From the IMG/VR virus record IMGVR_UViG_3300024503_000485, positions 155,445 through 219,444 of that record: a stretch of DNA of 64,000 nt; one strand, written 5' to 3'. The translations under genes and the position numbers were made by a program. Under the pieces are notes generated by a model. The model was not told the origin of the DNA, searched no databases, and saw only the letters and a list, made by a program, of their open reading frames with translations. Position 1 is the first letter of the stretch. Every line of letters starts with the position of its first letter. Below are positions 4,200-61,089 of the stretch, in pieces.

Positions 4200-6287
4200 A
4201 TGCCGTATAGCGTAAATTACACAGATAAAAATACAAAATCGCCAATTACGGTATATGACAATACTTCAAGTACCGATACAACATTAACATTTCCCGGACG
4301 AAATGTTACAGGCTACGGCCAGATTATTGCAGAAAATTTTCTCCACCTATTAGAAAATTTTGCTAGCCCCACCGAACCAGTTAATCCAGTTGAAGGGCAA
4401 TTGTGGTATGAAAGTGAAACTGGTACACTGATGATCTTTGACAACACCAGTTGGAAAGCAGCAGGCAGTATTCAGAAAAGCCCAACACAACCATCTGTTA
4501 GTGCAGACAAGGTTGGAGAGATCTGGGTCGACACCGTTAAACAACAATTATATGTTTGGTCAGGTGAAACATGGGTGTTGGTTGGTCCTCAATTCAGTAC
4601 AACTAGCGGTTTAAGAACTGGACCAATTGTTGACATTATTGACGACTCGGACAACACAGCTCGTAAAATTATTAAATTTTTAGTAGATGAAACGCCAATT
4701 GCTATTATTAGCGAAGATAGTTTTACTCCTAAAATTAGTATTCCTGGTTTTATCGATATTAAATCAGGAATTAATTTAACAACCGTTGCATCGGGCGACG
4801 GTAATTATGCTCCAAAATTGTACGGAACTGCTCAAGCAGCAGATGCATTGATTGTTAATGATGTAGAAGTTGTTGCTTCAAAGTTTTTAAGATCTGATAT
4901 TACTAATACAACTGAATATGGAATTAACGTTAAAAGTAATAGCGGTATTACATTAGGAGTTGACAGCGGATTTAGAATTTCATCTTCTGCAACATCGGCA
5001 AAAATTTATAATGCCAATCCTGGAAGTAGTATTGATTTACAAGTTAATAGAAACGGTAGTCAATCAACAATTTTAAGAGTTATTGATAATAAGATTGGTA
5101 TTAATATTGAAACTCCTCAGCGTGAACTTGACGTAGGTGGCGATATTGGTGTTAGCGGTGATGTTATTATCACAAGCACAGATCCAAGTACAAATTTTAA
5201 TAACGGATCTTTGAGAACAGCAGGCGGAGCCGCAGTTACAAAAAATTTAATTGTTGGAACAGAATTAGAAGTTGGCGGAACAACTACTATTAAAAATCTT
5301 CTTCCAAAGACAACTGAAACATATAGTTTAGGTGCAGATCCTACAACCGGCGGAAAACGTTGGGATACGGTTTACGCTAAAACTATCAAAGCAGATTTCT
5401 TAAAGGGTGTGTTAGACGGTGACGTTGCAGGTAATGCTAGAACAGCCACTAATTTAAGAACGGTTACTAGTTTTCAAATTAAAGGCGACGTAACATCTCA
5501 GGTTATTAATTTTGACGGTTCTGTTGGCGGAAGTATTAAAGAGTTTACAACAACATTAACTTCAAACATTATTGAAGGAAAAGAATTTCCTTTTCCAAAT
5601 GTATCAAAATCAGACGATTTGGTTTTAGTTTTTAGATCTGGTACAGGTCTAATAAAAGAATCAAGGGATGTATTTGTTGGTGACCTTGGAATTCCAATTG
5701 GCGGAATTTTACCGTACGCAGGCATCGATATTCCAGACGGATTTTTATTATGTGACGGATCAGAGGTTGAAAAATCAAAATATAGTAAACTATACGATGC
5801 TATTGGTAACACATATGGTTTGCCAACTAGGGGTGTAAACACTTTTGTATTGCCGGATCTACGTGGTAGATTCCCCCTAGGTCGAGATAATATGGATAAT
5901 TATGGCACCGTTCCTGAAGAAAACGGCGGCTTCATTGACGCAGGTGGCGGCAACATTGATCGTGTTGCAGGTACAGAAGCAGATACATTAGGTGCCGGTG
6001 CAGGAGATGCTGAAAGCGTATTAGAAGTTAGAAATCTGCCTGAACATGAACATAATTTAAAACCGCCTGGAGTTGATAGACAATTTGCTGTTGTTAGAGT
6101 TGATTCGGCGGTCGTTCCGGGAACTTCTCCTGGTTCAGGACTAGGACCAACAGCAGCTGGTCAAGCTCAGTATCTTAATACATCCGGAGGTATCAAAACA
6201 AGTGCTACTTTAGCAACCCCGTTTAGTATTATGAATCCGTTCTTGACTATTAACTATATCATAAGATCTGGTCCACCAGCATTCTAA
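4200..6287 (+). CDS. Tail fibre / short-fibre protein with C-terminal phage tail-collar domain
   Basis: IPIGGILPYAG..GFLLCDGSEV..LYDAIG..PDLRGRFPLG collar signature; N-terminal GYG..ENF..LLENFA..GQLWY domain shared with the next three genes. Confidence 0.85.
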   Translation: MPYSVNYTDKNTKSPITVYDNTSSTDTTLTFPGRNVTGYGQIIAENFLHLLENFASPTEPVNPVEGQLWYESETGTLMIFDNTSWKAAGSIQKSPTQPSVSADKVGEIWVDTVKQQLYVWSGETWVLVGPQFSTTSGLRTGPIVDIIDDSDNTARKIIKFLVDETPIAIISEDSFTPKISIPGFIDIKSGINLTTVASGDGNYAPKLYGTAQAADALIVNDVEVVASKFLRSDITNTTEYGINVKSNSGITLGVDSGFRISSSATSAKIYNANPGSSIDLQVNRNGSQSTILRVIDNKIGINIETPQRELDVGGDIGVSGDVIITSTDPSTNFNNGSLRTAGGAAVTKNLIVGTELEVGGTTTIKNLLPKTTETYSLGADPTTGGKRWDTVYAKTIKADFLKGVLDGDVAGNARTATNLRTVTSFQIKGDVTSQVINFDGSVGGSIKEFTTTLTSNIIEGKEFPFPNVSKSDDLVLVFRSGTGLIKESRDVFVGDLGIPIGGILPYAGIDIPDGFLLCDGSEVEKSKYSKLYDAIGNTYGLPTRGVNTFVLPDLRGRFPLGRDNMDNYGTVPEENGGFIDAGGGNIDRVAGTEADTLGAGAGDAESVLEVRNLPEHEHNLKPPGVDRQFAVVRVDSAVVPGTSPGSGLGPTAAGQAQYLNTSGGIKTSATLATPFSIMNPFLTINYIIRSGPPAF

Positions 6288-47060: not shown

Positions 47061-47318
47061 TTATCTTTTTATGGCAGAGCCGCCACCGAAGATATTAGTT
47101 TTCATATCTAGGGCATTTTTAGCTGTACCGTCCTTATTTTTTGCTTGTTTTACTTTAGGAACTGCTGGTGCTTTTGTACCAGATTTGCCTGGGCTACCTG
47201 TGTAGCTTTTATTTCCACGATCTTTTCCTATAGCAATATGAGGGCTAACAACCGTGCCGATATTAGCCGATGATGTTGCTCCTGCTGTAGCTGATTCTAA
47301 AATATCACGTATTTTCAT
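47061..47318 (-). CDS. Small basic internal-head protein candidate
   Basis: N-terminus MKIRDILE-S; AATAAATA at 47326-47333. Confidence 0.55.
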   Translation of the reverse strand: MKIRDILESATAGATSSANIGTVVSPHIAIGKDRGNKSYTGSPGKSGTKAPAVPKVKQAKNKDGTAKNALDMKTNIFGGGSAIKR

Positions 47319-47324
47319 AATATA

Positions 47325-47525
47325 TTATTTATTCTTTCCGCTTTTCATATTTGCACACCAGTGATACATTTTAGATTTCTCACCCGATGCATTTTTTGCA
47401 CGTTTGCGTAGATCAGTAACTGAACCAGAACAACTAGCCCCTGAACGTTTTACTCTTCCGGGGCGGCTTTTTCCTTTAACTTTTCCGTCAGCAAAGTTTT
47501 CTATAACAAACTCTTTAGCTCTCAT
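47325..47525 (-). CDS. Small basic internal-head protein candidate
   Basis: N-terminus MRAKEFVIE-N, resembling the T4 IPIII capsid-targeting leader. Confidence 0.6.
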   Translation of the reverse strand: MRAKEFVIENFADGKVKGKSRPGRVKRSGASCSGSVTDLRKRAKNASGEKSKMYHWCANMKSGKNK

Positions 47526-48691
47526 CTCATTGCTACCTGGAAAGCCTGATGCTTTTCTTTTCTAGAGTCTAAATGTTTAAGCCCGGGATTGATAGTTTTA
47601 GTAACCGCTTTAGTATCTTTAAAACTATCAATTTTTGGTGCTACTCTATTTTTCCAATACCAAACTGCTACTTTAGCAGCAATTTCTGGTTTTTCTACAA
47701 GTTCGGGTTTTTGCTCTAACGGCAATCCTAATGCTTGGCCTGCTTTCTTATAATTGTCTCGACCTGTCAGCTGTATGTATCCGCGACCTTTATATTTTGC
47801 TCCGTCTCCAACATTTTTATTACCCAATGCTTTTGCTTTTTTAGGAGCATATTTAGGATCATATTTTCGAAAGTCTAATGATCCGCCTATTTCTTTCATG
47901 TGTTTAAAATCTAAAGTTTCGTGAGCGCATTGTGCTAAAAACGCTGTAAGCTCGTGACCTACTATACCTGCTTTTTCAGCAGCCTTTTTTAAGTAGACTT
48001 CGTGGGGATTACCGGTTACGCTTTTTGCAATATCTTTTTTAGATACCTGTTGAATAACATCCGGTTTAGAATGTTTAGCATTAGCATCACTAGGAGCACC
48101 GAATGCCATTGCAGTTCCTAGTGCCCCGGCTGCTGCCCAGTCCTTCCATCCCTCGTCAACTTCTCCCTTAGCAGCAGTTTTTAATGCAGAAAAGACTTTA
48201 GATAAACTATCTTCGTCTGCTTGATACTTAATAGCAATACCGCCCGCTTGTTGCCAAGCACGAATGTTTACACCGTAATCGTCAATAAGAATATTAGGAG
48301 TACCGTCAGCATTTTTTGCATATTTGTATTTTTCGTGTTCGAATATAATTTTGTCAGCAGGAACATGAATATGTTTTTTCAGCCATTCACGTTTACCTCT
48401 AATGCTTCCTTCTTTATCAAAGTTTAATGGGCTGCTTAAAATATTATAACCACCTGCATAATCAACTACTATGCTTAAAAGTTTATTAGCAGTAGAAAAT
48501 GCCGGAAGGTCACGAAATAATTCATAGGCATTAGAGTCTTTAAAAAATGTTTCCCATTGATCTTTTGTCATTTTATTGTAGTGCTCTACATCATGTAAAC
48601 CTCCTACATGATTAAAAAGATCAGCAAGGACTCCGTCCATATCAACATAGACTTTCATTCCTTTGGGTAAACTAAACTCTTCTGCTCTCAT
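47522..48691 (-). CDS. Fusion: HAD 5'(3')-nucleotidase (NT5C-like) plus GH19 lysozyme/chitinase
   Basis: VYVDMDGVLAD, ILSSP, K, LIDD; then VDE-GWKDWAAAGALG linker; then FLAQCAHET, YKGRGYIQLTGRDNY, TINPG. Confidence 0.85.
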   Translation of the reverse strand: MRAEEFSLPKGMKVYVDMDGVLADLFNHVGGLHDVEHYNKMTKDQWETFFKDSNAYELFRDLPAFSTANKLLSIVVDYAGGYNILSSPLNFDKEGSIRGKREWLKKHIHVPADKIIFEHEKYKYAKNADGTPNILIDDYGVNIRAWQQAGGIAIKYQADEDSLSKVFSALKTAAKGEVDEGWKDWAAAGALGTAMAFGAPSDANAKHSKPDVIQQVSKKDIAKSVTGNPHEVYLKKAAEKAGIVGHELTAFLAQCAHETLDFKHMKEIGGSLDFRKYDPKYAPKKAKALGNKNVGDGAKYKGRGYIQLTGRDNYKKAGQALGLPLEQKPELVEKPEIAAKVAVWYWKNRVAPKIDSFKDTKAVTKTINPGLKHLDSRKEKHQAFQVAMR

Positions 48692-48762
48692 ACTGGACTA
48701 TATGGATTTAGAGGACGATCCCATTCGCCTTCTTGTGGTGGATAAACAGGATACTCGTTCAT
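48688..48762 (-). CDS. 24-aa Pro/Tyr-rich peptide, not in the ORF track
   Basis: [24 protein letters not shown]; exactly fills the gap with ATGA overlaps at both ends. Confidence 0.6.
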
Positions 48763-49082
48763 ACTGCAAAACTACTTCCACAACCGCAGGTTGTTACTGC
48801 ATTAGGATTTTTGATAGTAAAACTTGATCCCATTAATTCTTCTTTATAATCTATCTCTGCACCGTGTAGATATTGCATACTCATTGCGTCAACTAATACT
48901 TTCCATGCACCGCAATCAAATTCAAAGTCATCTTCGTTTTGTTCGTCGTCAAAGGTAAAGCCGTAACTAAATCCACTACATCCGCCACCTTGTACAAAGG
49001 TACGAAGTTTTAAATTAGGGTTTCCCTCTTCAGAAAGCAAATCTTGAATTTTTATTTTTGCTGATGGTGATATTGTAATCAT
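48759..49082 (-). CDS. erpA: A-type Fe-S cluster carrier (ErpA/IscA/HesB family)
   Basis: [43 protein letters not shown]. Confidence 0.9.
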
Positions 49083-49083
49083 T

Positions 49084-49287
49084 TTATTTTCCTACAGGTT
49101 TTTCTCCGGTTAGATAAGGAAGACTGAACCATAATTGAAACCATTCCGGAGTACCTGGTTTAATATTATGTTGTTTCATAAGTTCGCCTTTTTCGTTTCC
49201 AGTAATACTTATGTTGCTGCCGTCGTAAGGTTGATAACCTTTAAATTCGGTAATACCTGCAAGACGTTTTAGTTCAGATAAATCCAT
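49084..49287 (-). CDS. Small internal-head protein candidate
   Basis: Start [14 protein letters not shown] is coupled by TAATG; [13 protein letters not shown]. Confidence 0.6.
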
Positions 49288-49913
49288 TATGCTGTGGCTG
49301 GTTCGCCTGTACGAGAAACTTCCCATTTCTTGCCAGTCTGTTCAGTTTTCTTACGGCACATGTCTTGCAATCTACGAAGCTGAGCCATTTCTCTGTGATC
49401 GTCTGCGTATGTTCCTTGACCAGGAAACACTTTCCATTTTTTACCGTTGATATAGATAGCAAAGTTATTTGGTGGTTCGGTGTTGCCCTCGTCCCAATCA
49501 TCTTCTCTATTTCTACGTCCAAATCCGCTTACGCTACTATCGTAATCTCTTTGATAAGCATCACGTCCAAAACCTGATTCTTTCATAGGATCCTTTCCTG
49601 CCTGTACTTTTTTATACCATGAAATTAATTCAGCATCACTAGCAAGTTCAAGATAGTTTATTTCCCAGTCCATCTTTTTAGCTAAGAATTGAATAATTTG
49701 TTGTCTTTTAGATCTATCTAATAAACCTTCTGTTACTTCTGCTGGTTTTTTATGTTTTTCATATCCTTGTTTTTGTGCCTTCTTCATATCTTTATGAGCA
49801 CCGGCACCTGAGATAACACTTTGTGCAGCATGAGCTACAGGGTTTCTAGGTTTGACATTATACACTTTTGCTCTTCGGCTTTTCTTATGTTCTAATATAT
49901 CAGATATTTTCAT
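49287..49913 (-). CDS. Modular internal-head protein candidate
   Basis: MKISDILE leader; internal VTE-G and MKE-S junctions separate short modules. Confidence 0.6.
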   Translation of the reverse strand: MKISDILEHKKSRRAKVYNVKPRNPVAHAAQSVISGAGAHKDMKKAQKQGYEKHKKPAEVTEGLLDRSKRQQIIQFLAKKMDWEINYLELASDAELISWYKKVQAGKDPMKESGFGRDAYQRDYDSSVSGFGRRNREDDWDEGNTEPPNNFAIYINGKKWKVFPGQGTYADDHREMAQLRRLQDMCRKKTEQTGKKWEVSRTGEPATA

Positions 49914-52900
49914 GATGATCTCTTTTGTTTAGGACCCTTACGAGTTTTCCATTTTTTATCAGTGGAACACCAATAGCGTCCATATCCTTCTTTTACTTCT
50001 TTCTTTTTAGGATAACCGTGTTTTATTTCTAGTTGATAACCCTGTAATCCTTGTTTATCTAAAACCTTACTAATAAATTCTTCGGCTTCTTTCGCAGAAG
50101 AAAATTTATCACCTAAATTATATTTCCTCATTTCGCCATCGATCATTACATAGGCAATAGTAATAGGTTTGACTGGTTCTTCTGCCGCCTGTGCCGGACT
50201 TGCTAATAAATTAGCAGCAGCTAAAGCTGCGCCTGCCGTTTTACTTTTCCAACCTTCTTCAACGCTATCAATCATTGGATCAATACCGCGACTTCGGATT
50301 CCACCTTTTCTTCTTACTTTAGCAAGTTCTTCTAAGGCATGACGAATTTGTTCTACATTCATTTTAAGTTCGTCAAATTGTTTGGCCATGTTTTGCCATT
50401 CGTATGGACTAGCATTGTCTACTCTGCTAGCAAGATCTTTAATTTGTCCAGCTGCTCTCATCATTCTATATTTTAACTTCGCTGGGTTGGCTTTGTCATG
50501 GCTATGAATCATAGGATTCATTGGTTCGGAAGGATCCATTTCAATCGGTGCTTCAGATATGCTTTCTTGAATACCCATGCCCTTGCGTGTGAAATCCATT
50601 AATTTCATAATCCAATCTTTCCCTAATTTTTGAACATCAAAACCTTGAGACCATAATGCAAATTGCTGTTCTGGAGTAGCATTAGGATCTTTTAAAATGT
50701 TACGTAATTTAGTAAAACTCATTCCAGTTCCGCCAGTTTCGGCAGCTCTTGGTGTAACTTCTACATCAAATTTAACATGTTCAAATCCTGGATATTTAGG
50801 ATTCTTCATCCTTTTAGATAAATGCTCCATCCATTTTTTAAATCCTTCATATCGATCTTCGCCAACCATAACAATGATATGATCGTATGGAGGAGGATTA
50901 CTTGATGTTACTAATTCTTTTTCAATTTTTTTCATAACTAATCCACCTTCTTGGATCAGCTGGAACATGGCCTTCTTTTCTGGATATAATTTTTGCCATG
51001 TTTGTAATTTAACAGAAGCTGGAATAGGATCGTCTGGTCCCACGGCACTACTAATATAAACATAAGGATCAGCATTTAACTGAGACGCTTTGTTTAAAAC
51101 AAAATCTACAAGTTGTTGATGTCCAATGTGCCCAACAAAACTTCCTGCGGTAACGACAGCAGTTTTGCCCGATCTTCCATCGCCTGTTGCTCCAGGAGGT
51201 CTTGCAGATTTAATTGCTGCGTTTTTTGCAGAAATAATATCTTTTTGTTCTTGACTAGTAATTTTAACAGGACCATTCTTTGTGTTAAGAATAATGCCTT
51301 CATAATCTTTGCCTAACTTATCCTTTCCTATAATATCTGGATGTTGGATGATAAATTTTGCTAGATATTCTTTGACAGGCTGCAATGCTTCGGTAGCTTC
51401 TTTTTTAAGATCTCTTTTACCGCTATTAACTAACGATCGTAATGTTTCAAGATTTTCAATGGGAGGCAATGCCCCAGTTACATCTAAACTGCCGTTAGTA
51501 GTTAACGAGTTGTCAATGAACATTGTTGTTCCAATGCGACCAATTTTTCTCAATGCAGAGATGTATTTGTCGCTATTTGGATGTTGTTCGCCAGTTGAGC
51601 TTTTTTCAGCAAACAATGGCACAAGTGCTAGAGTAACACCTTCGGGCAACTTGTCATAATGTATGCCAACAAATTTTAATTTACCATCTTCTGTTTCAGT
51701 AGCAAATGGTAGATATAAAACTTCACAATGAATTTTTACATCATTGAGAGCGGTATTACCTAATTTTTGATCAACGTTAGCAATGACATGCATCATCTCG
51801 TCGTATAGATCATCAAATAACTTAGCCCTAGCTTTTACATCTGGAGCGGCTTGTCTTTCTTCAGCATGTTTGCTGAATGTACCAGGTTCAAACTTAGGAC
51901 CACTACGACTAGTTTCCATATATGGTTTGCCAGATTTATCTTTACCAAACCTAGCACCAAACCCGTCTACTTTAACGGTCATTGGAACATTGTGTAATTC
52001 AAATTTTCCTGTTGCTGAATTTTTTAATTCGTCTAATAAATTTAAAAAATCAGAATCCTTCATTTTTTCTAAATGAACAATTCCTTTTCTTTTACTTTGT
52101 ACTACTTCGGCTTCGTTAATACTTTCGGATACTTTGTAACTTGCTTTATAATCTTGACGCATTTGTTCAAGATTTTTATGAGGTGTAACGTTTAAAGTTT
52201 TTAATGCATAGTTAAGTGCTGTATTTTTTTCTAAGATATCTCTTTCAGGATCGCCTTTATATAATCCTTGTGCGCCAGGAGCATATAGCTTATCAATAAA
52301 TGCATCAATGACTTTTTCCTTTTCATCCTGAGGAACAACAAGATTCATAATTTCTAATAATCCTGTAAAACTCCATGTCTTAGGAAGAAGTTTTTGTATT
52401 TCTGTTTCTTTAACTCTTTTACCAAATATGTTTTGGAAAATTTTTCCAATATTCTTTTCGTAACCACTTGCTGGCAACGCCCTCATAACAGGAAGACCGT
52501 CAATTTCTAAAGGCTGTCCGGCATCGTCTAATACTGGTTCATATTTAGGACGAAGGCCTCCGCCTTCTTTGCTACTAACAGCAAAAGAAAACATATTGTC
52601 TGTTGTTGGAACATCTTGTTCAACTCTAGCTTTACCTCGGCCAACCATTTTTCTTAATAAAAAATCTTGGCTTGTTAATCGTGTAAATGATTGAATTAGA
52701 TACTTGTGAAATACACCTTTGATACCTTGGCTTAAATCTTCCCAGCTACTGCTATGACTAAATCCTGCCCAATCAGTGGGTTCGTCTTTTTCATAATCTA
52801 CAAATTCAAGATCAATCTGTACCTTAATAGGAGGATCAGTTAACTCCCACATTGTACTATATTGTTCGTTGCCTTTACTAAATCCAATTAATTTTCCATT

Positions 52901-53311
52901 GCCAACAACTTTACCTGTTGAGGATTGTAAAAATTGAACAAGTTCTCCTGCATATTCTTTATTAATTTGTGTATCTATATCGCCAACTTTAGGTTTAATA
53001 CGTTCAAACTCGTCGTCGGGTAAGTCAGTATTAAAAAAATGTAAACTAGATCCGCTTAAGAATTTTTTACTTGCTAAAACTTTTTTATTCCAAAGTTCGT
53101 GACCAACTGATGCAGTAAAACTAGAATTAATTCCGTTTAATAATTTGTCTAATATTGGAACAATATAAGAACGCTTGTGAACTTTAAGATCAATTTGCTG
53201 AGCTTGATGGTCACCGGTATCTCCTTGCCAGCCAGGGCTTTGAGTCGAAAGGTTTCCACCTTCTATAAGAGGTAAATTATTTCTCTTGTAGAATAATTCT
53301 AAAAGTTTCAT
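49910..53311 (-). CDS. 1133-aa multidomain protein: Pol-beta-type nucleotidyltransferase, ligase-like KxDG domain, HxGH cytidyltransferase-like domain and small C-terminal modules
   Basis: GSS..GDID..QID; TVKVDG..EGIIL..PVK; GSFVGHIGH; junctions at LIE-G, INE-A, ISE-A, VEE-G, VKE-G. Confidence 0.7.
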   Translation of the reverse strand: MKLLELFYKRNNLPLIEGGNLSTQSPGWQGDTGDHQAQQIDLKVHKRSYIVPILDKLLNGINSSFTASVGHELWNKKVLASKKFLSGSSLHFFNTDLPDDEFERIKPKVGDIDTQINKEYAGELVQFLQSSTGKVVGNGKLIGFSKGNEQYSTMWELTDPPIKVQIDLEFVDYEKDEPTDWAGFSHSSSWEDLSQGIKGVFHKYLIQSFTRLTSQDFLLRKMVGRGKARVEQDVPTTDNMFSFAVSSKEGGGLRPKYEPVLDDAGQPLEIDGLPVMRALPASGYEKNIGKIFQNIFGKRVKETEIQKLLPKTWSFTGLLEIMNLVVPQDEKEKVIDAFIDKLYAPGAQGLYKGDPERDILEKNTALNYALKTLNVTPHKNLEQMRQDYKASYKVSESINEAEVVQSKRKGIVHLEKMKDSDFLNLLDELKNSATGKFELHNVPMTVKVDGFGARFGKDKSGKPYMETSRSGPKFEPGTFSKHAEERQAAPDVKARAKLFDDLYDEMMHVIANVDQKLGNTALNDVKIHCEVLYLPFATETEDGKLKFVGIHYDKLPEGVTLALVPLFAEKSSTGEQHPNSDKYISALRKIGRIGTTMFIDNSLTTNGSLDVTGALPPIENLETLRSLVNSGKRDLKKEATEALQPVKEYLAKFIIQHPDIIGKDKLGKDYEGIILNTKNGPVKITSQEQKDIISAKNAAIKSARPPGATGDGRSGKTAVVTAGSFVGHIGHQQLVDFVLNKASQLNADPYVYISSAVGPDDPIPASVKLQTWQKLYPEKKAMFQLIQEGGLVMKKIEKELVTSSNPPPYDHIIVMVGEDRYEGFKKWMEHLSKRMKNPKYPGFEHVKFDVEVTPRAAETGGTGMSFTKLRNILKDPNATPEQQFALWSQGFDVQKLGKDWIMKLMDFTRKGMGIQESISEAPIEMDPSEPMNPMIHSHDKANPAKLKYRMMRAAGQIKDLASRVDNASPYEWQNMAKQFDELKMNVEQIRHALEELAKVRRKGGIRSRGIDPMIDSVEEGWKSKTAGAALAAANLLASPAQAAEEPVKPITIAYVMIDGEMRKYNLGDKFSSAKEAEEFISKVLDKQGLQGYQLEIKHGYPKKKEVKEGYGRYWCSTDKKWKTRKGPKQKRSS

Positions 53312-53658
53312 TAGTCTTCCTGTTTATAGTCGCCGTTCTCGATATGCTTTTCTTGTTCAGTAGCAATCATTTTTGCTAGTTCAACAATTTTGCTTTCAGG
53401 AAACTTTTCATTGGCATCTTCAATATCAAACATTTCACAATAATTTTCTAAACAACTTCTTAAAGGTTTAATGTAAATTGTGAAAGCCTTTGGATGTCCT
53501 GCATGTTTTTCGTGGCGCTTTACCGCAGGAAAGAAATATTTTGTTAATAATTCTGTATTATTATCAATATAAAATTTTAAATCGTCAATCCAATCAATGT
53601 CAGCTTGCTCGTCATCTTTTGGAGCTCCTATAGCCGACCACATTTCTTTTAATAACAT
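53311..53658 (-). CDS. Hypothetical protein (MLLKE leader)
   Basis: 115-aa ORF coupled by TAATG overlaps. Confidence 0.6.
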   Translation of the reverse strand: MLLKEMWSAIGAPKDDEQADIDWIDDLKFYIDNNTELLTKYFFPAVKRHEKHAGHPKAFTIYIKPLRSCLENYCEMFDIEDANEKFPESKIVELAKMIATEQEKHIENGDYKQED

Positions 53659-54476: not shown

Positions 54477-55163
54477 TTATTTAGCTAAAATTTGATAGTC
54501 GTAAACCCTACCCACAACTTCACCATTTCGCAATTGCATCATGAATAGAGTTTTTTCGTCCTCTACAAGTACGTATCGACGGTCCCAATTATAATCGGTC
54601 TTTATAAACCAACTTTTAACTGCGGTTGACATTCGTATCTTTTCCCCTTGAGTTTCAATCCAAGAAACAAAACTTTCTTTTGCTTCTTTATTTCCTTTTA
54701 ACTTATGGGGAAGAAGATATACTTTGTAGTTATATCTATTATGAGGTAATTTTTTAGCAAAAATCGAATTTGAATTTGTTTGTTCTTGTTCTTGCCCAGG
54801 AAATGGTTCAAATACATGTCTTACATAATCTTTAAATTCTAAAGCAAGATTTTTACAAAATGTAGCATCGTTAGTGTATATGTCGATATATCTACTTTCA
54901 ATTCTTTTAGTAAATTCAACATTTTTATTTTTTTCTAAAAATGTAACTAGTTCTAAGATTTGATCTTTGTTACTAAATGCTTGTTTTCTGCTGTCAAAAT
55001 AATAATGTCGATCTTGTTCTTCTGGGTTTAAACAGAATTCTCTAATCTCATCATATGTTTTTGTGCGTAACAAAGATACCCCCTTGATCAAGACGGTAAC
55101 TTTGTATAACCACTTATTGTAAAACTTTTGACCTGTATACTTTACATCATACGGTTTCTTCAT
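54477..55163 (-). CDS. Hypothetical protein
   Basis: 228-aa ORF, GGAGG RBS. Confidence 0.65.
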   Translation of the reverse strand: MKKPYDVKYTGQKFYNKWLYKVTVLIKGVSLLRTKTYDEIREFCLNPEEQDRHYYFDSRKQAFSNKDQILELVTFLEKNKNVEFTKRIESRYIDIYTNDATFCKNLALEFKDYVRHVFEPFPGQEQEQTNSNSIFAKKLPHNRYNYKVYLLPHKLKGNKEAKESFVSWIETQGEKIRMSTAVKSWFIKTDYNWDRRYVLVEDEKTLFMMQLRNGEVVGRVYDYQILAK

Positions 55164-57459
55164 TGGATTCCTCCAAGTTTAACCCTCGCTTCAATGCCTT
55201 TTTCTGTTCTTTGGTTAAAATAGGACTAATTTCAAATTTTAGATCGTCATTCTCAATGCTAACATCAACTCGTCCGCCGTTTTGTAATTCTCCAAATAGG
55301 ACTTTACGGCTCAAAGGAGATTTGAGTTTATTATCAATTAAACGAGCCAACGGTCTTGCGCCCATCTTTTTATCGTAACCTCTTTCAGCTAACCATTTAA
55401 CTGATTCGGAATCAACAACAATCTCAATGCCTTTATCTTTAAGTTGATCGTTAAGTTCTTTAACAAACTTTTTAACAATTTGACCAACGGTAACCATTGA
55501 AAGATTTGAAAACTTAATAATAGCATCTAAACGATTACGGAACTCCGGAGCAAAGAATTTCTTAACTGCCTTGTCGTCCTCGTCGTCCTTGCTTAAGTCA
55601 CCAAAACCTATGGTATTTTTTTCGTTGTCTGCTGCCCCTAAATTACTGGTCATAATTAAAATAGTGTTGCGACCGTCTGCTTGTTTTCCATTACTTCCAG
55701 TTACAAATCCGTTATCCATAAATTGTAACAAGATGTTTGACACATCGGGATGTGCTTTTTCAATTTCATCTAAAAGCAATACAGCATTTGGGTGTTCTTG
55801 TAGTTTGGTAATCAACTGACCTGCGTTATCTTCGTATCCAACATAACCAGGAGGTGCACCAATTAATCGAGCAACGCTATGTTTTTCTTGATATTCACTC
55901 ATATCAAAACGAATTAATTGCATACCCATTTTATCTGCTAACGCTCTTGCAGTTTCTGTTTTACCTGTACCAGTTGGACCTAAAAATAGAAAACTGCCAA
56001 TGGGTTTATTAGGATTTTTCATACCTGCTTGAGAAACAAAAATCTTATCAAGAAGATTATCAACTGCTGTATCTTGTCCATAAACAGATGCCTTCATGGA
56101 ACCTTCTAGGTCAGATAAGTTCTTACTTTCTTTTTGTGCTACCATTTCTAGCGGCATATTAACCATTTTACTAAGTTCGTATGTAACCTGTTCAATATCT
56201 ACCAGTTGTTCAATGCCTTCCATGCCGTCTTCGTCTTTTACTTTATAACGAGCACAAGCACAATCGATAATGTCAATTGCTTTGTCTGGTAATTTTTTAT
56301 CAGACATATACTTCATAGAAAGTTTAACTGATTGCTCAATTGCACCGTCAGTAATTTTAACGTTGTGATGTTTTTCGTAGTATTTCTTAATACCTTTAAT
56401 AATTTTAACTGCAAGTTCTGGCGTTGGCTCGTCAACCGTAACACGTTGGAATCGACGCATTAGAGCACGATCTTTTTCAAAATGTTTACGATAATCTTCC
56501 CACGTAGTTGATGCTACAAGTTTAATAACACCTTTAGTAAGGATTGGCTTCAACATATTGGCCATATCATTTGAACTTTGATTAGCAGCACCGGCACCTT
56601 GCATCATGTGTGCTTCGTCAATGAATAAAATAATCTTGCCTTTCTTTTCTAAAGCACCTAACACAGCTTTTACACGTTCTTCAAAATCTCCACGATACTT
56701 ACTACCAGCTAGCAATGCTGAAATATCTAAACTATAGACCTGATGGTCTTGAATAAACTTAGGTACTTTCTTTTCAAAGATCTTGCGAGCAAGACCTTCT
56801 ACAATAGCAGTCTTACCGACTCCGGGTTCACCTACCAGTAAAACATTACATTTGTTTCTGCGAGCAAGAACAAGTTGTACCTTTTCAAGCTCGTCGTCTC
56901 TACCAATAACAGGATCAATTTTACGTTGTTTTGCTTGTAGGCTTAGGTTAGTACAAAAAGTATTAATAATTCGTTCCATCTGACTAGGGTTTGTAACTGC
57001 GGTTTCTTGGCTTGATTCTTCTTCATTATTAACCATTTCTTGGAAATAATTAATAAATTTTTCTTTTGTTAAGCCGCCTTTGTTTAAAAAATAAAATGCA
57101 AAACTATTTTTTTCATTTAAGATGCTAACAATAACATCTGCAACTTCAATACGTTGACGCCCACTAAACAAAACTTGAGTAAAACATCTATTGAGCACAC
57201 GTTCTACAGCATGAGTTTTTCTTGGTTTTTCGCATTCTGGATTTTTAATATCGCTAAGATTATTTTTAATATAATGATCTAGATTTGTTTTAATAAAATT
57301 AGCATCAGCACCGAAGTCGGTGATCATCTTAAATGAATCAGCATCATCCATTATACCAAGAAGCAAATGTTCAATGGTAATATATTCGTGATCAAGGCTT
57401 TTTGCCATATTCATCGAATTTTCAAAAATTTGTTGTAGACTTTGACTTGGTTCAATCAT
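55147..57459 (-). CDS. clpA: ClpA-like AAA+ unfoldase
   Basis: Clp N-domain (HEYITIEHLL), DPVIGRDDE, GEPGVGKT, FIDEAH, GPTGTGKT, LLDEIEKAH, IGF loop, GARPL; no ClpB middle domain. Confidence 0.92.
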   Translation of the reverse strand: MIEPSQSLQQIFENSMNMAKSLDHEYITIEHLLLGIMDDADSFKMITDFGADANFIKTNLDHYIKNNLSDIKNPECEKPRKTHAVERVLNRCFTQVLFSGRQRIEVADVIVSILNEKNSFAFYFLNKGGLTKEKFINYFQEMVNNEEESSQETAVTNPSQMERIINTFCTNLSLQAKQRKIDPVIGRDDELEKVQLVLARRNKCNVLLVGEPGVGKTAIVEGLARKIFEKKVPKFIQDHQVYSLDISALLAGSKYRGDFEERVKAVLGALEKKGKIILFIDEAHMMQGAGAANQSSNDMANMLKPILTKGVIKLVASTTWEDYRKHFEKDRALMRRFQRVTVDEPTPELAVKIIKGIKKYYEKHHNVKITDGAIEQSVKLSMKYMSDKKLPDKAIDIIDCACARYKVKDEDGMEGIEQLVDIEQVTYELSKMVNMPLEMVAQKESKNLSDLEGSMKASVYGQDTAVDNLLDKIFVSQAGMKNPNKPIGSFLFLGPTGTGKTETARALADKMGMQLIRFDMSEYQEKHSVARLIGAPPGYVGYEDNAGQLITKLQEHPNAVLLLDEIEKAHPDVSNILLQFMDNGFVTGSNGKQADGRNTILIMTSNLGAADNEKNTIGFGDLSKDDEDDKAVKKFFAPEFRNRLDAIIKFSNLSMVTVGQIVKKFVKELNDQLKDKGIEIVVDSESVKWLAERGYDKKMGARPLARLIDNKLKSPLSRKVLFGELQNGGRVDVSIENDDLKFEISPILTKEQKKALKRGLNLEESNEETV

Positions 57460-58304
57460 TATTCGACTCCGTCTCTTAGTTGTTGTACTTTATGTATTTG
57501 ATTAGCTGATAGGTTACGTGGAATATTGACATTAATTTTAATTAATAACGGCCCACGTATTTTTGAACGCATATTTGGCAAACCTTCTCCTTTGCAACTT
57601 AGTATTGTATTTGATTGTGTTCCTGCTGGAACACTGACACTAATATTTTTTCCTGAGATAGTAGGAACATCTATTGTTGTTCCTAATATAGCATCCCAGA
57701 CAGAAATATTATGTTCAAAGATTAAAGAATCGCCTTCTCTAATAAATGTTGGATGTTTTCGAATATAAAGATTAACAATCAAATCTCCTGCCGGGACATC
57801 TCGTAGGGTTGTGTCGCCCATACCTTCATATCGAATTTGTTGGCCGTGATCTACGCCTGCAGGAATTGAAATATTAATTAATTTTCTTTGCCCGCCGGGT
57901 ATAGTAATTTCAGCATTTAAATCTTTGCCTTTTAAAACTTCTTCTAAGGAAAGTTCTACGTTAATGTTAACAGATCTATTTCTTCGCATTGGCCTACGTC
58001 CAAATCCAAACTGCGAAAAAATATCGTCCATGCCCGGCATGCCGCCACCGAAGTGAAATTCAAATGGGCCTTGGTTGTAAAATCCGCCGCCCATTCCTGG
58101 TTGTGCATTAGGATCTCCGCCCATATCAATAATCCGTTTTTTATCAGGATCGCTTAATGCTTCGTAGGCAGTAGATATTTCTTTAAATTTATTTTGGTCA
58201 CCTCCACGATCGGGATGATGCTTCATCGCAAGTTTGCGATAAGCCTTTTTAATCTCGTCGTCAGATGCACCTCTTTGTAAACCTAGTGTTGAGTAATAAT
58301 CCAT
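57459..58304 (-). CDS. dnaJ: DnaJ-family co-chaperone (class B/CbpA-like, no zinc finger)
   Basis: MDYYSTLG..KKAYRKLAMKHHPDRGG, G/F-rich linker, C-terminal domain; start reassigned to MDYY. Confidence 0.9.
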   Translation of the reverse strand: MDYYSTLGLQRGASDDEIKKAYRKLAMKHHPDRGGDQNKFKEISTAYEALSDPDKKRIIDMGGDPNAQPGMGGGFYNQGPFEFHFGGGMPGMDDIFSQFGFGRRPMRRNRSVNINVELSLEEVLKGKDLNAEITIPGGQRKLINISIPAGVDHGQQIRYEGMGDTTLRDVPAGDLIVNLYIRKHPTFIREGDSLIFEHNISVWDAILGTTIDVPTISGKNISVSVPAGTQSNTILSCKGEGLPNMRSKIRGPLLIKINVNIPRNLSANQIHKVQQLRDGVE

Positions 58305-58593: not shown

Positions 58594-59115
58594 TTAAATT
58601 TCTGGTTGATCAGGTTGAACCGGCATTGGTTTACCTGTACTGCTCATCATCGGTGCAGCTGGTGCCCCAAATGTTGCTGGCTTAGATACGCCTCCAAAGC
58701 TGCTTCCGCTAAAGCTACTTGGGGAGCTTGGTGCTCCGAAACCTGGCGTAGTCGCTGCTGGGAAACTGCTTGGTGCTGCCGTAGCAGGGCCAAATGTTGA
58801 AGGGTTACTTGTTGCCATTGGTTGTGCGCCACCATTGTTTGCTCCATTTAGTTTTTCTTGTGTGCGACCAAATGCCGCGATACCTAATACTGCACCCATT
58901 GCGATATGGAATAAACCAGCACCTTGTAAGGTTAATGGATTCCATTGTGTAATAGGACTATGTGTTAGAGTTTGTAACAAACTCCATAAGATTGGAAATA
59001 CAACCATGTCCATCATGCAGACAACCATATACATCCAACCCATCATTGGACGCCATTTAGCATTCATCCAATCTTCTTTTTTCTTTTCACTTTCGCTCTT
59101 TACTTCTTCAGTCAT
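58594..59115 (-). CDS. Holin-like membrane protein
   Basis: WRPMMGWMY, two hydrophobic helices, FGRTQEK, Pro/Ser-rich tail; in the lysis cassette. Confidence 0.6.
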   Translation of the reverse strand: MTEEVKSESEKKKEDWMNAKWRPMMGWMYMVVCMMDMVVFPILWSLLQTLTHSPITQWNPLTLQGAGLFHIAMGAVLGIAAFGRTQEKLNGANNGGAQPMATSNPSTFGPATAAPSSFPAATTPGFGAPSSPSSFSGSSFGGVSKPATFGAPAAPMMSSTGKPMPVQPDQPEI

Positions 59116-59722: not shown

Positions 59723-59989
59723 TTATTTAAGTGTTTCCCAAATTTTTTGTTGCCCTTTGTACCATGAAATCCAATTATCAACCTGTGCTTTGCAATCGTA
59801 ATATTCCTTGTAGTTGTCTGCTACAACTTCAACAATGGCGCTAAGTTTGTCATTTTTAGGATCTACGGTTTTTAGATCGGGACAAGCTTCTAATAATTCT
59901 TTAGGAACCTCGGGCCATTTAGGAATTACAGGAGCAGTTGAACATCCTGCTAATAAAGTTACTGCTAATAAAAGTGCTAATTTTTTCAT
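59723..59989 (-). CDS. Outer-membrane spanin (lipoprotein)
   Basis: Lipobox LLAG-C, Pro-rich, CPDL..NY..YYDC; overlaps the i-spanin gene. Confidence 0.8.
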   Translation of the reverse strand: MKKLALLLAVTLLAGCSTAPVIPKWPEVPKELLEACPDLKTVDPKNDKLSAIVEVVADNYKEYYDCKAQVDNWISWYKGQQKIWETLK

Positions 59990-60450
59990 TTTTTAGCCTC
60001 TGGATTAGTTGCAGCTTTATTAACTAACTCGTTTACTCGAGGGTCTATTTTGCATTCTGCATTGATAATTTTTTCAACTTCTTGAATTTGTGTTTTAACC
60101 GTATTGTAGTATTCAACACGAACTTTTTGTTTCTTTTTCTTTTCTTCACTTAATTGTTTATTAAGGTCTGAACTAGCACGTTCTGCCTGTGCAACTTTAT
60201 CTTCTGCTTCTTTTACCTTAGCTCTCCATTCTGCTTCAGTATCGTAGCCACCTTTAAAATAAACCCCAGCAACTAATAATACAACACTGACAATTTGTAA
60301 AAGTAAATGATACGGTGCTAGTGCAGGGAACCAACGTACAATTCTATGTAATAAAAAGAAACTTAAAAATGTACCAATGGCACCTGCTAGTAATACTAGG
60401 TGTACAGCATAAATTAGTACAGCATCCGGTACCCACGCTAGCATCCACAT
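59986..60450 (-). CDS. Inner-membrane spanin
   Basis: N-terminal TM helices, coiled coil, C-terminal Cys; between endolysin and lipoprotein. Confidence 0.75.
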   Translation of the reverse strand: MWMLAWVPDAVLIYAVHLVLLAGAIGTFLSFFLLHRIVRWFPALAPYHLLLQIVSVVLLVAGVYFKGGYDTEAEWRAKVKEAEDKVAQAERASSDLNKQLSEEKKKKQKVRVEYYNTVKTQIQEVEKIINAECKIDPRVNELVNKAATNPEAKK

Positions 60451-60453
60451 AAG

Positions 60454-61089
60454 TTATGCTCCAAAAACGTGTAATGCGTGATTATAATGTTTGATACGAT
60501 CTTCTAAACCAATAGTACCACCGTTGATACGCTTGGTTAATGTTAGGATGTCACCTTTGTCTGCCCATTGATTTAGGTTGTTTGTTTCCCAGAACCAGCA
60601 AGCTGATTGCACAGCACCTTCGAATGTCTGTAGGTATTCTGCCGCTTCCTCTACAGGAATATCTAAACTGGCAGCAAACCAGGTATAATTTTCTTTACCT
60701 GTTAATTGAATTAGTCCGCGACCGCAGTAACGATAACCGTCGCCAGAGTCTTCTGGACCGTTACCCATACGATTTGCATAAATGCGATTTGCTATAGCTT
60801 CTTGCTTGTTAGGTAAACTAGCATAGTGATTAGCTGTTGCATCGTCTGTAAAATACTTAGGAAAAATCTTACGTAGACTAGGTGCTTTATAATTTAAGTT
60901 TTCTTTTAATACACGAAATCCACCTGATTCGTGTGCGCATTGTGCCATAAAAGCTGCTACACGTTGGGGGGTGTTAATTTCATAATCTGGTAAAATTTCA
61001 TTTAATGCTTCGTACCAATGATCAATATATGGATTACCTTTGATGATATCTGCTACTTGATCTCTAGTAAAGTTAAATGTGAAGCTCAT
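60454..61089 (-). CDS. Endolysin, glycoside hydrolase family 19
   Basis: AAFMAQCAHESGGF..ENLNY..YANRMGNG..GRGLIQLTGKENY..TKRINGG. Confidence 0.92.
   Translation of the reverse strand: MSFTFNFTRDQVADIIKGNPYIDHWYEALNEILPDYEINTPQRVAAFMAQCAHESGGFRVLKENLNYKAPSLRKIFPKYFTDDATANHYASLPNKQEAIANRIYANRMGNGPEDSGDGYRYCGRGLIQLTGKENYTWFAASLDIPVEEAAEYLQTFEGAVQSACWFWETNNLNQWADKGDILTLTKRINGGTIGLEDRIKHYNHALHVFGA

What the first reader, a model, noticed from the sequence alone, without database searches (positions are those of the whole stretch)
50555..53311. Three different nucleotidyl-transfer folds fused in one protein
Seen, in order: a Pol-beta-superfamily NTase (GSS...GDID...QID, near 52980), a covalent-lysine ligase/capping-type domain (KVDG at 51962-51973, EGIIL, PVK) and a Rossmann HxGH domain (GHIGH near 51125). 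Established: these folds underlie CCA-adding and protein-nucleotidylating enzymes, RNA/DNA ligases, and NMNAT/cytidylyltransferases. Inference: this is a packaged kit for tRNA/RNA end repair, NAD or nucleotide restoration, or host-protein modification, countering anticodon-nuclease or NAD-depleting defences at the moment of infection.
Basis: partly seen in the sequence, partly recalled or inferred. Interest (0 to 1): 0.72.

Follow-up and report, generated by a model that had tools for sequence, protein, structure and literature searches.

The report
Phage protein fusing three nucleotidyltransferases
A river jumbo phage encodes one 1133-residue protein that joins a polymerase-beta-type nucleotide adder, an RNA-ligase-type sealing enzyme and a cytidylyltransferase-type enzyme; it is probably a nucleic-acid end-repair tool, but its substrate is untested.

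Summary

- **Domain 1 (aa 17-395):** a Pol-beta-superfamily fold. GS, DxD and the third acidic residue are invariant.
- **Domain 3 (aa 705-917):** an HxGH / S-x-T-x-x-R Rossmann transferase, assigned by sequence only.

No Pfam model detects domains 1 or 2. The three-domain core is fused in all 80 related viral contigs examined. It occurs as adjacent separate genes in Xanthomonas and Stenotrophomonas phages. A related phage has a DUF6267 plus same-type HIGH-transferase protein in the same genomic slot, so the ligase-like/HIGH pair looks like the conserved unit.

Most likely function (about 0.4): nucleotide addition at 3' ends plus sealing of broken RNA, like RlaP with an RNA ligase. The role of domain 3 is unexplained.

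Delivery inside the virion has only indirect support. NAD restoration has none. This is a new variant of a known kind.

The parts
49910..53311 (-). Whole ORF, 1133 aa plus stop (P0001). Its start overlaps the stop of the upstream ORF 53311-53658. Its stop overlaps the start of the downstream ORF 49287-49913.
   Evidence: The identical protein was seen on 31 contigs. The stretch is present in 14 or more riverine DNA runs and 6 metatranscriptome runs.
53264..53311 (-). N-terminal leader, aa 1-16 (MKLLELFYK...), of the form M-x-L/I-x-E/D plus two hydrophobic residues. It precedes the invariant E17-G-G-N20.
   Evidence: The leader is present in 101 of 120 fused homologues and 79 of 120 DUF6267 proteins. 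In this genome the strict motif occurs only twice, both times at residue 1. It is low-confidence in the model.
52127..53263 (-). Domain 1, aa 17-395: Pol-beta-superfamily nucleotidyltransferase. Catalytic core: G87-S88 (53048-53053), D111-x-D113 (52973-52981), D167/E169 (52805-52813). A beta-sheet insert and a C-terminal helical domain follow.
51200..52126 (-). Domain 2, aa 396-704: ligase-type adenylyltransferase domain with no OB domain. Motif I is K447-V-D-G450 (51962-51973). My assignment of the other invariant sites: III E530 (51722-51724), IIIa F547/Y552, IV E671-G672 (51296-51301), V K683 (51263-51265).
50561..51199 (-). Domain 3, aa 705-917: HIGH-signature (HxGH) Rossmann nucleotidylyltransferase. 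Motifs: H728-I-G-H731 (51119-51130) and S865-F-T-K-L-R870 (50702-50719).
   Evidence: phrog_3041 'cytidyltransferase', E 3e-15 over aa 713-919. FAD_syn hits in 21 of 25 homologues, plus CTP_transf_like and ATP-sulfurylase hits. RibF profile hit at E 1.7e-4. Nearest Atlas clusters are viral CTP_transf_like. Not folded.
50276..50560 (-). Tail module A, aa 918-1012 (APIEMDP...ALEELAKVRRKGGIRSRGID). It recurs after HIGH transferase domains in other phage proteins.
   Evidence: It is found independently in P0191, P0266 and P0167 (with CTP_transf_like) and in P0216 (with DUF6267). It is present in 8 of 80 related tails.
49913..50275 (-). Tail module B, aa 1013-1133: G-W-K followed by an Ala-rich, weakly hydrophobic segment (TAGAALAAANLLASPAQAA), a small domain and a basic C-terminus.
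   Evidence: Mean Kyte-Doolittle value about 1.0. A similar motif sits in the neighbouring HAD-GH19 protein. The module occurs in unrelated proteins, for example one with Pterin_4a. It is present in 6 of 80 related tails.

Best explanation
The protein is a phage multi-enzyme that works on broken nucleic-acid ends, most likely RNA such as cleaved tRNA.

- **Domain 1** would use the D111/D113/D167 metal site to add one or a few nucleotides to a 3'-OH.
- **Domain 2** would react with ATP to form a K447-AMP adduct, pass the AMP to a 5'-phosphate and seal the break, as classical RNA ligases do.
- **Domain 3** would transfer a nucleotide from an NTP onto a phosphate group. The acceptor is unknown. 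It could be a small phospho-metabolite that serves the ligase, or a phosphorylated nucleic-acid end.

The ligase-like and HIGH-transferase domains form the conserved pair. The Pol-beta domain was added in this clade.

What is shown: the folds of domains 1 and 2, the conserved residues of all three domains, and the fusion and linkage pattern. What is inferred: the chemistry, RNA as the substrate, and the counter-defence role. Entry with the DNA, as a virion-packed protein, is possible but only indirectly supported.
For: - The folds of domains 1 and 2 and the invariant catalytic residues of all three domains are established.
- RNA ligases are the best structural matches of domain 2. It has no OB domain, as in RNA ligases.
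- The genome already has a canonical ATP-dependent DNA ligase (PF01068, E 8e-23), so domain 2 is an extra, specialised ligase.
- The core of domain 1 matches RNA 3'-end adders best: TUT7, Trf4, TUT1 and GLD-2.
- Pairing of a Pol-beta adder with an RNA ligase is a known repair logic. RlaP adds 1-2 nucleotides to damaged RNA 3' ends (bioRxiv 10.64898/2025.12.29.696909; PMC7824862 section 3.4.9).
- Linkage is strong.
  - All 80 related IMG/VR loci have the three domains in one ORF.
  - Xanthomonas phage X1 and Stenotrophomonas phage Mendera carry them as neighbouring genes.
  - My domain 3 profile hits the C-termini of 87 of 120 DUF6267 proteins at about 1e-22.
  - One such protein sits in the same syntenic slot in a related 266-kb phage contig.
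- Contigs from three metatranscriptome runs cover the gene.
Against: - No biochemical data exist for any member.
[quoted passage not shown] One homologue has an HD domain in its tail.
- The role of domain 3 is not explained by any known RNA-repair scheme.
- The top Foldseek matches of domain 1 are DNA polymerases of family X, covering palm and thumb. It does not match the RlaP family model.
- Only two tRNA genes were found, and no other RNA-repair genes, though the record is only about 62% complete.
- Presence in RNA libraries does not prove transcription.
Confidence: 0.4

Rival explanations
1. DNA break or nick repair. Domain 1 would act as a small family-X-like gap-filling polymerase and domain 2 would seal DNA. 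Together they would mend nicks, gaps or restriction damage in the phage genome, as ASFV Pol X does with the ASFV ligase, or Pol mu/lambda with ligase IV.
For: - Top Foldseek PDB hits of domain 1 are Pol beta, lambda and mu, with probability up to 1.0 and about 280 aligned columns.
- BFVD hits include a 'DNA polymerase-like protein' and giant-virus family X polymerases.
Against: - TM-scores are only 0.26-0.33.
- No 8-kDa lyase domain or helix-hairpin-helix DNA-binding domain was recognised.
- Domain 2 ranks RNA ligases first and has no OB domain.
- A canonical DNA ligase is encoded elsewhere in the genome.
Confidence: 0.2
2. Covalent marking of nucleic-acid ends rather than repair. Domain 3 or domain 2 would put a nucleotide-type cap, such as an adenylyl or NAD-like group, on 5'-phosphate or triphosphate ends of phage RNA or DNA. 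Domain 1 would tail 3' ends. The marks would protect phage molecules from host nucleases or sensors.
For: - HIGH transferases join an NMP to a phosphate acceptor (established chemistry of the family).
- Ligase-type enzymes make 5'-adenylylated ends as intermediates.
- The ligase-like/HIGH pair is conserved in two divergent versions without a constant third partner. This fits a self-contained two-step chemistry on a single end.
Against: This is inference only. No known phage system of this kind was found in the literature searched. All ligase motifs needed for complete sealing appear to be retained.
Confidence: 0.12
3. Nucleotide-cofactor or signal metabolism. Domain 3 would be an NMN, FMN or similar adenylyltransferase that restores NAD+ or another dinucleotide drained by host defence. 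The other two domains would make or destroy small nucleotide molecules.
For: - The HxGH region resembles FMN adenylyltransferase (RibF, E 1.7e-4; FAD_syn in 21 of 25 homologues).
- The split homologue in phage X1 starts with G-R-F-Q-P-V-H-S-G-H. From memory, that is the motif form of archaeal and NadM-type NMN adenylyltransferases.
- Phage NAD+ salvage through HIGH transferases is known (PMC9503650 section 3.6).
Against: - No NAPRTase/NadV partner was found in the available genome. [quoted passage not shown]
- The constant partner is a ligase-type domain, which has no role in NAD salvage.
- Matches fall below Pfam thresholds and cover mostly the HxGH motif.
Confidence: 0.13
4. Nucleotidylation of host proteins. 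One or more domains would AMPylate or UMPylate host proteins after injection, in the manner proposed for some Pol-beta NTase domains of polyvalent proteins.
For: - Pol-beta NTases of polyvalent proteins are proposed to modify proteins (PMC5512222).
- The tails of homologues have the domain repertoire of polyvalent proteins.
Against: - Domain 1 is a large enzyme with a helical nucleic-acid-polymerase-like second lobe, not the minimal NTase type.
- Domain 2 has the full apparent ligase motif set.
Confidence: 0.05

Closest known systems
RlaP (PF10127, e.g. T4 NrdC.11, Pseudomonas RtcB-operon RlaP) working with RNA ligases
   Same: A Pol-beta-superfamily enzyme physically linked to an RNA-ligase-type enzyme. 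Each has an N-terminal NTase lobe and a C-terminal helical lobe. RlaP adds 1-2 nucleotides to damaged RNA 3' ends before ligation (bioRxiv 10.64898/2025.12.29.696909; PMC7824862).
   Different: None of 53 members of the domain 1 family matches PF10127, even at E <= 1. RlaP does not appear among the structural matches. Here the two enzymes are fused and joined to a third, HIGH-type transferase.
Nick-sealing RNA ligases (Naegleria gruberi NgrRnl / Deinococcus DraRnl type), T. brucei REL1, T4 Rnl1 and Rnl2, archaeal Rnl3
   Different: Sequence identity is 8-14%. No Pfam ligase model matches. There is a long helical insert between motif I and E530, and about 120 residues between F547/Y552 and E671. 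None of the flanking domains of those ligases is present.
Pfam DUF6267 (PF19782) phage proteins, mostly fused to a cytidyltransferase-like domain
   Same: - DUF6267 has invariant KWDG, HEGYV and K-x-K, which I read as ligase motifs I, IV and V.
- It has the same kind of N-terminal leader.
- Its C-terminal partner is homologous to domain 3 (87 of 120 proteins, about 1e-22).
- It sits in the same syntenic slot in a related jumbo phage.
- It is the nearest family by language-model features.
   Different: The sequence relation to domain 2 is weak: hhalign E 0.0018, probability 15%, and no HMM hit. DUF6267 proteins lack the Pol-beta domain. No paper in the library mentions the family.
Family X DNA polymerases with a partner ligase (ASFV Pol X and ligase; Pol mu/lambda with ligase IV)
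   Same: They are the top Foldseek matches of domain 1 over palm and thumb. They follow the same fill-then-seal logic.
   Different: TM-scores are low. No lyase or helix-hairpin-helix domains were recognised. The ligase partner here looks like an RNA ligase.
Polyvalent proteins of phages (Iyer et al. 2017, PMC5512222)
   Same: Several catalytic domains sit in one long phage polypeptide. The tails of homologues are highly variable and carry lysozyme, LysM, VanY, ParB_N, HD and zincin-like HExxH domains.
   Different: No MuF, portal or other virion-linking domain was found. The gene is not in a structural module. This trio of domains is not described in that paper.
HIGH-superfamily adenylyl- and cytidylyltransferases (RibF FMN adenylyltransferase, NadM/NadR, TagD, PPAT)
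   Same: The HxGH motif and an S-x-T-x-x-R motif are both invariant, and the size is about 200 residues.
   Different: The match is below Pfam thresholds (16 bits against a cut-off of 27). The acceptor substrate is unknown. The usual pathway partners, such as NadV, were not found.

Membership tests
Pol-beta nucleotidyltransferase superfamily (domain 1) | G-S motif, D-x-D/E and a third acidic residue on neighbouring strands | tested here: met
   G87, S88, D111, D113, D167 and E169 are invariant in 53 sequences. The G-S to D-x-D spacing is 22 residues, longer than I recall as usual (about 10-13).
Pol-beta nucleotidyltransferase superfamily (domain 1) | Core alpha/beta fold superposes on known members | tested here: met
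RlaP (PF10127) | Match to the family profile | tested here: not met
   There is no PF10127 hit at E <= 1 in P0001 or in any of the 53 domain 1 homologues.
RlaP (PF10127) | Genomic association with an RNA ligase | tested here: met
   Domain 1 is fused to an RNA-ligase-like domain here and in all 80 related loci. The two are adjacent or near-adjacent genes in phages X1 and Mendera.
RlaP (PF10127) | Adds 1-2 NMP to RNA 3'-OH | not testable with these tools
   This needs an enzyme assay.
Family X DNA polymerase | Palm and thumb superpose; fingers, 8-kDa and helix-hairpin-helix DNA-binding domains present | tested here: inconclusive
ATP-dependent RNA/DNA ligase (covalent nucleotidyltransferase) superfamily (domain 2) | Motif I K-x-D-G with the nucleotide-accepting lysine | tested here: met
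   K447, D449 and G450 are invariant in 25 sequences. They are also kept as KLDG in phage X1.
ATP-dependent RNA/DNA ligase (covalent nucleotidyltransferase) superfamily (domain 2) | Motifs III, IIIa, IV and V in order | tested here: met
   E530, F547/Y552, E671-G672 and K683 are invariant and in the canonical order. Assigning each site to a motif is my inference; no residue-level superposition was available.
ATP-dependent RNA/DNA ligase (covalent nucleotidyltransferase) superfamily (domain 2) | Adenylyltransferase fold | tested here: met
ATP-dependent RNA/DNA ligase (covalent nucleotidyltransferase) superfamily (domain 2) | Match to a curated ligase family profile (RNA_ligase, RNA_lig_T4_1, DNA_ligase_A_M) | tested here: not met
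   None of the 25 members has such a hit at E <= 1. A PDB profile search found no ligase.
DUF6267 (PF19782) | Match to the family profile | tested here: inconclusive
   - There is no hmmscan hit.
- hhalign gives E 0.0018, probability 15%, over the motif I region.
- My domain 2 profile hits 2 of 120 DUF6267 proteins at about 5e-4.
- 90 of the 100 nearest named Atlas clusters carry DUF6267.
- The syntenic slot and the C-terminal partner are the same.
HIGH-signature nucleotidylyltransferases (CTP_transf_like / FAD_syn; domain 3) | H-x-G-H motif at the first strand-helix turn | tested here: met
   H728, G730 and H731 are invariant in 25 full-length homologues. They align to the RibF HxGH.
HIGH-signature nucleotidylyltransferases (CTP_transf_like / FAD_syn; domain 3) | Second motif of I-S-S-T-x-x-R type | tested here: met
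   G863, S865, T867 and R870 are invariant. That they correspond to this motif is my inference.
HIGH-signature nucleotidylyltransferases (CTP_transf_like / FAD_syn; domain 3) | Profile match above the curated threshold; Rossmann fold | tested here: inconclusive
   FAD_syn scores 16.4 bits against a cut-off of 27. phrog_3041 gives E 3e-15 over the whole domain.
NMN adenylyltransferase (NadM/NadR) NAD+ salvage | Co-occurrence with NadV-type NAPRTase | tested here: not met
   There is no PF04095 match in the available genome. The record is only about 62% complete.
Phage polyvalent proteins | Many unrelated effector domains in one polypeptide, linked to virion or DNA-entry apparatus | tested here: inconclusive
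   The protein is multi-domain and the tail repertoire is typical. There is no virion-linking domain, and no virion proteome was available.

The most novel reading that the evidence does not exclude
The conserved ligase-like plus HIGH-transferase pair would be an undescribed two-enzyme machine for nucleic-acid ends. The HIGH domain would nucleotidylate a terminal phosphate, or make the nucleotide donor. The ligase-type domain would then seal or cap the end.

The protein would be loaded into the capsid through its short N-terminal leader, trimmed by the T4-type prohead protease, and injected with the DNA. Repair or protection of RNA would then start before the phage can translate anything.
Probability: 0.12. 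Interest if true: 0.85.

Novelty: new variant of a known kind. Interest (0 to 1): 0.6.

Why it matters
Two of the three domains belong to large phage-only families that no curated model recognises. PHROGs lists both as 'unknown function'. The whole-protein search found 805 or more fused proteins and about 1190 representative relatives. Showing them to be a Pol-beta adder and an RNA-ligase-type enzyme gives a testable function to many 'hypothetical' genes of freshwater jumbo phages. It does the same for cultured Xanthomonas, Stenotrophomonas, Campylobacter and Vibrio phages.

The repeated coupling of a ligase-type domain to one particular HIGH transferase appears in two divergent versions, one of them Pfam DUF6267. 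It points to a step in nucleic-acid end chemistry that current RNA-repair schemes do not include.

If the protein is also carried in the virion, it would be a case of repair enzymes delivered ahead of phage gene expression.

Tried and rejected
- **Direct family scans.** The Pfam scan of the whole protein gave only a weak FAD_syn hit. The PDB sequence search of the whole protein gave nothing meaningful.
- **Profile searches.** PDB profile searches for domains 1 and 2 found no relatives. Pfam scans of every family member found no relevant family either. Only fold comparison gave an assignment.
- **RlaP membership.** This was tested and not met.
- **DUF6267 as a relative of domain 1.** Rejected: hhalign shows no relation.
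- **The other 1133-aa ORF in the genome.** It is an unrelated sheath-like protein, and the equal length is coincidence.
- **Gene neighbourhoods of split homologues on metagenome contigs.** Nearly all neighbours were unannotated, so they gave no functional clue.
- **Other repair or salvage genes in the genome.** Searches for Rnl2, Rnl1, RtcB, NAPRTase and DUF6267 found nothing. The record is about 62% complete. The control genomes for PF09511 and PF19782 also gave no hit, so those two negatives say little.
- **A transmembrane anchor in the tail.** The Ala-rich segment is only weakly hydrophobic (mean Kyte-Doolittle value about 1.0), so I make no call.
- **Transcription.** Metatranscriptome contigs cover the gene, but DNA carry-over cannot be excluded.
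- **Literature.** Searches found no description of this three-domain combination. Burroughs and Aravind 2016 could not be read.


Full report
**What is there.** A single ORF runs on the minus strand from 53311 to 49910 and encodes 1133 residues. Its start overlaps the stop of the upstream ORF, and its stop overlaps the start of the next ORF, so it sits inside a run of co-directional genes. All quoted motifs are at the stated coordinates: GSS 87-89, GDID 110-113, QID 165-167, KVDG 447-450 at 51962-51973, EGIIL 671-675, PVK 681-683 and GHIGH 727-731.

**The host genome.** The window is the last 64 kb of a 219,444-bp viral contig rated about 62% complete.
- It encodes a sheath-like protein, a T4-type major head protein, portal, prohead protease and family B DNA polymerase.
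- The polymerase is closest to those of jumbo phages: Sinorhizobium phage Phosso, Agrobacterium phage Atu_ph07, Vibrio phage 2.275.O and the large E. coli phages.
- The exact gene sequence is present in at least 14 riverine DNA runs and 6 riverine metatranscriptome runs. It is therefore not an assembly artefact.
- Contigs from three RNA libraries cover most of the ORF at 99-100% identity. The tool warns that DNA can be present in such libraries.

**Domain 1 (aa 17-395).**
- No Pfam family matches this domain in any of 53 family members. A PDB profile search finds nothing.
- An AlphaFold2 model built on 53 sequences is confident, with pLDDT 93.6.
- Foldseek against the PDB returns DNA polymerases beta, lambda and mu almost exclusively. 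E is 2e-3 or weaker, probability reaches 1.0, about 280 columns align, and TM is 0.26-0.33.
- The best AlphaFold DB cluster is a 'polymerase nucleotidyl transferase domain' protein, E 6e-6.
- In BFVD the relatives are uncharacterised phage proteins, one of them fused to a ParB/sulfiredoxin domain, and one protein from Atu_ph07.
- G87, S88, G110, D111, D113, Q165, D167 and E169 are invariant, as are E17-G-G-N20, D192, K198, D358 and K362.
- This is a Pol-beta-superfamily enzyme of a distinct clade with an intact metal-binding triad. It is not a detectable member of RlaP (PF10127).

**Domain 2 (aa 396-704).**
- Again no Pfam or PDB sequence match was found. The model is confident, with pLDDT 92.5.
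- Foldseek gives archaeal RNA ligase (E 3e-5), then T. brucei REL1, T4 Rnl1, Naegleria RNA ligase and T4 Rnl2, then DNA ligases.
- The invariant residues fall in the order of ligase motifs I, III, IIIa, IV and V: K447-x-D449-G450, E530, F547/Y552, E671-G672 and K683. The motif labels are my assignment.
- No OB domain follows, as in RNA ligases.
- The genome has a separate canonical ATP-dependent DNA ligase.

**Domain 3 (aa 705-917).**
- phrog_3041 'cytidyltransferase' matches aa 713-919 at E 3e-15.
- 21 of 25 homologues hit FAD_syn and a few hit CTP_transf_like or ATP-sulfurylase, all below or near the thresholds.
- The family profile hits the FMN-adenylyltransferase part of RibF at E 1.7e-4, over the HxGH segment only.
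- Language-model neighbours are viral CTP_transf_like clusters.
- H728, G730, H731 and G863, S865, T867, R870 are invariant. They fit the two signature motifs of this superfamily.

**How the parts travel together.**
- The whole-protein search finds 805 or more proteins of similar length that cover aa 1 to about 920 at 47-73% identity.
- All 80 related IMG/VR loci have the three domains in one reading frame.
- The exhaustive representative search (1190 hits) also finds domain 1 alone, domains 1+2, domains 2+3 and domain 2 alone.
- In Xanthomonas phage X1 and Stenotrophomonas phage Mendera the three are separate genes in one cassette, with an extra unknown gene between the first two. Campylobacter CP220-type phages and Vibrio phage pv27 show only a domain 1 match.
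- Three AlphaFold DB clusters that match domain 2 are named after a cytidyltransferase-like or citrate-lyase-ligase-like domain, so they appear to carry both domains.
- Pfam DUF6267 has invariant KWDG, HEGYV and K-x-K. It is the nearest family to domain 2 by language-model features, but only weakly by profile.
- 87 of 120 DUF6267 proteins carry a C-terminal domain that my domain 3 profile hits at about 1e-22.
- In a related 266-kb phage contig, such a 570-residue protein occupies the same slot as the window's gene: DnaJ, ClpB, two small genes, this gene, then on to DsbA and DNA polymerase. No domain 1 lies within 7 kb.
- I conclude that the ligase-like/HIGH pair is the conserved functional unit and that the Pol-beta domain is an addition.

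**The ends of the protein.**
- After domain 3 the tails of relatives range from 1 to 934 residues and share little.
- Among them are HD, phage lysozyme, LysM, ParB_N and DUF6321 domains and VanY. Three homologues have an N-terminal extension with an HExxH motif.
- The window's own tail has two modules that also occur in other proteins. Module 918-1012 usually follows HIGH transferases. Module 1013-1133 occurs, for example, in a protein with a Pterin_4a domain.
- The DNA-run assembly breaks into short contigs with variant bases between about 49.5 and 50.3 kb, that is in the tail and the start of the next gene. This fits strain variation there.
- The first 16 residues form a leader, M-x-L/I-x-E/D plus two hydrophobic residues. 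It is present in 101 of 120 fused homologues and 79 of 120 DUF6267 proteins, whichever domain follows.
- In this genome the strict motif occurs only twice in 68,357 residues, both times at residue 1. The second case is a Gly/Ala/Gln-rich 369-residue protein beside the portal, protease, head and baseplate-hub block.
- A looser form is found on 7 of 229 ORFs, including both small ORFs downstream of the gene. My rough expectation by chance is about 1.5.
- The genome encodes a T4-type prohead protease.
- In T4, diverse internal proteins share only a short capsid-targeting sequence (PMC3012670). From memory, that sequence and the protease sites have the form L/I-x-E, which the leader also has. This is a lead, not a test.

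**Interpretation.**
- The folds of domains 1 and 2, and the intact catalytic residues of all three domains, are well supported.
- The most economical function is extension of 3' ends followed by sealing, and the evidence leans to RNA. RNA ligases are the best matches, no OB domain is present, the domain 1 core resembles RNA 3'-end adders, and a separate DNA ligase exists.
- That is the logic of RlaP with RNA ligases in phage and bacterial RNA repair (PMC7824862; bioRxiv 10.64898/2025.12.29.696909). From my own knowledge, it is also the logic of uridylyltransferase plus REL1 in kinetoplastid editing.
- Several points count against a firm call. There is no end-healing kinase or phosphatase. Domain 1 resembles family X polymerases. 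Domain 3 has no role in any known repair scheme.
- I put RNA-end repair at about 0.4, DNA repair at 0.2, cofactor metabolism at 0.13, end capping or marking at 0.12 and protein nucleotidylation at 0.05.
- Virion delivery is a separate, indirectly supported idea, at roughly 0.3.

**Novelty.** The kinds of enzyme and the adder-plus-ligase pairing are known. Three things were not described in any paper I could search:
- these two divergent, unmodelled families;
- their constant coupling to one HIGH transferase;
- the three-way fusion in a widespread group of freshwater jumbo phages.

I rate it a new variant of a known kind, with interest 0.6.

Noticed in passing
window 47522-48691 (-): A 389-aa protein fuses a HAD-type 5'(3')-deoxyribonucleotidase-like domain (aa 12-163) to a GH19 lysozyme/chitinase-like domain (aa about 216-387). 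The link, G-W-K-D-W-AAAGALGTAMAFGA, resembles the G-W-K plus Ala-rich segment in the tail of the 1133-aa protein. It might be a signal-anchor-like or shared targeting segment.
   Followed up: partly
window 60454-61089 (-), 58594-59115 (-), 59986-60450 (-); genome C1:123661-126894: A second GH19-type endolysin lies beside holin-like and spanin-like genes. A third GH19-like domain sits inside a 1077-aa protein next to the portal gene. The genome therefore has three GH19-type domains in different contexts.
   Followed up: no
window 53264-53311, 49893-49913, 47298-47318; genome C1:129125-129145: A short N-terminal leader, M-K/R-L/I-x-E/D plus two hydrophobic residues, is shared by the 1133-aa protein, the two small ORFs downstream of it (MKISDIL, MKIRDIL) and a low-complexity 369-aa protein beside the head module. 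It may be a capsid-targeting or protease-processed propeptide.
   Followed up: partly
window 55147-57459 (-), 57459-58304 (-), 48759-49082 (-): The phage encodes a ClpA/ClpB-like double AAA+ protein, a DnaJ-like protein (38% identical to a gene that hits Pfam DnaJ in a relative) and a HesB/IscA-like Fe-S assembly protein. Relatives add peptide deformylase and ferritin in the same block.
   Followed up: partly
L001 (Xanthomonas phage X1) 4879-5883 and 8326-8742; L002 (Mendera) 4249-5193: The split cassette has an extra gene of about 320-335 aa between the Pol-beta-like and ligase-like genes. This gene matches the first half of phrog_12709, and domain 2 matches the second half, so the two are fused in some phages. 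A ParB-like small protein downstream matches the C-terminal end of phrog_3041 'cytidyltransferase'.
   Followed up: partly
window 1-3518 (+) and genome C1:95702-104917, 104973-110471, 80648-87109: The genome has very long ORFs of 4561, 3071, 1832 and 2153 aa. The window begins inside the 4561-aa one.
   Followed up: no
window about 26000: Coding strand and GC/AT skew switch sign near 26 kb: plus-strand genes before it, minus-strand genes after it.
   Followed up: no
window 49500-50340: In the DNA run that may be the source, the assembly breaks into short contigs with variant bases and loose ends at 49581 and 49907. One low-depth contig touches 52292-52309 and 49885-49907 only briefly. This suggests co-existing strains that differ in the tail of the protein and the next gene.
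   Followed up: no
tails of homologues (alignment A7; for example P0010, P0066): Many tails share short conserved blocks: M-L-P-K-S-A-F-x-G-S-D-K-N-K-L-G-x-A-G, ending in G-D-L-V-G, and a C-terminal C-W-K-G-Y...K-C-V-P-V cysteine motif. Their function is unknown.
   Followed up: no
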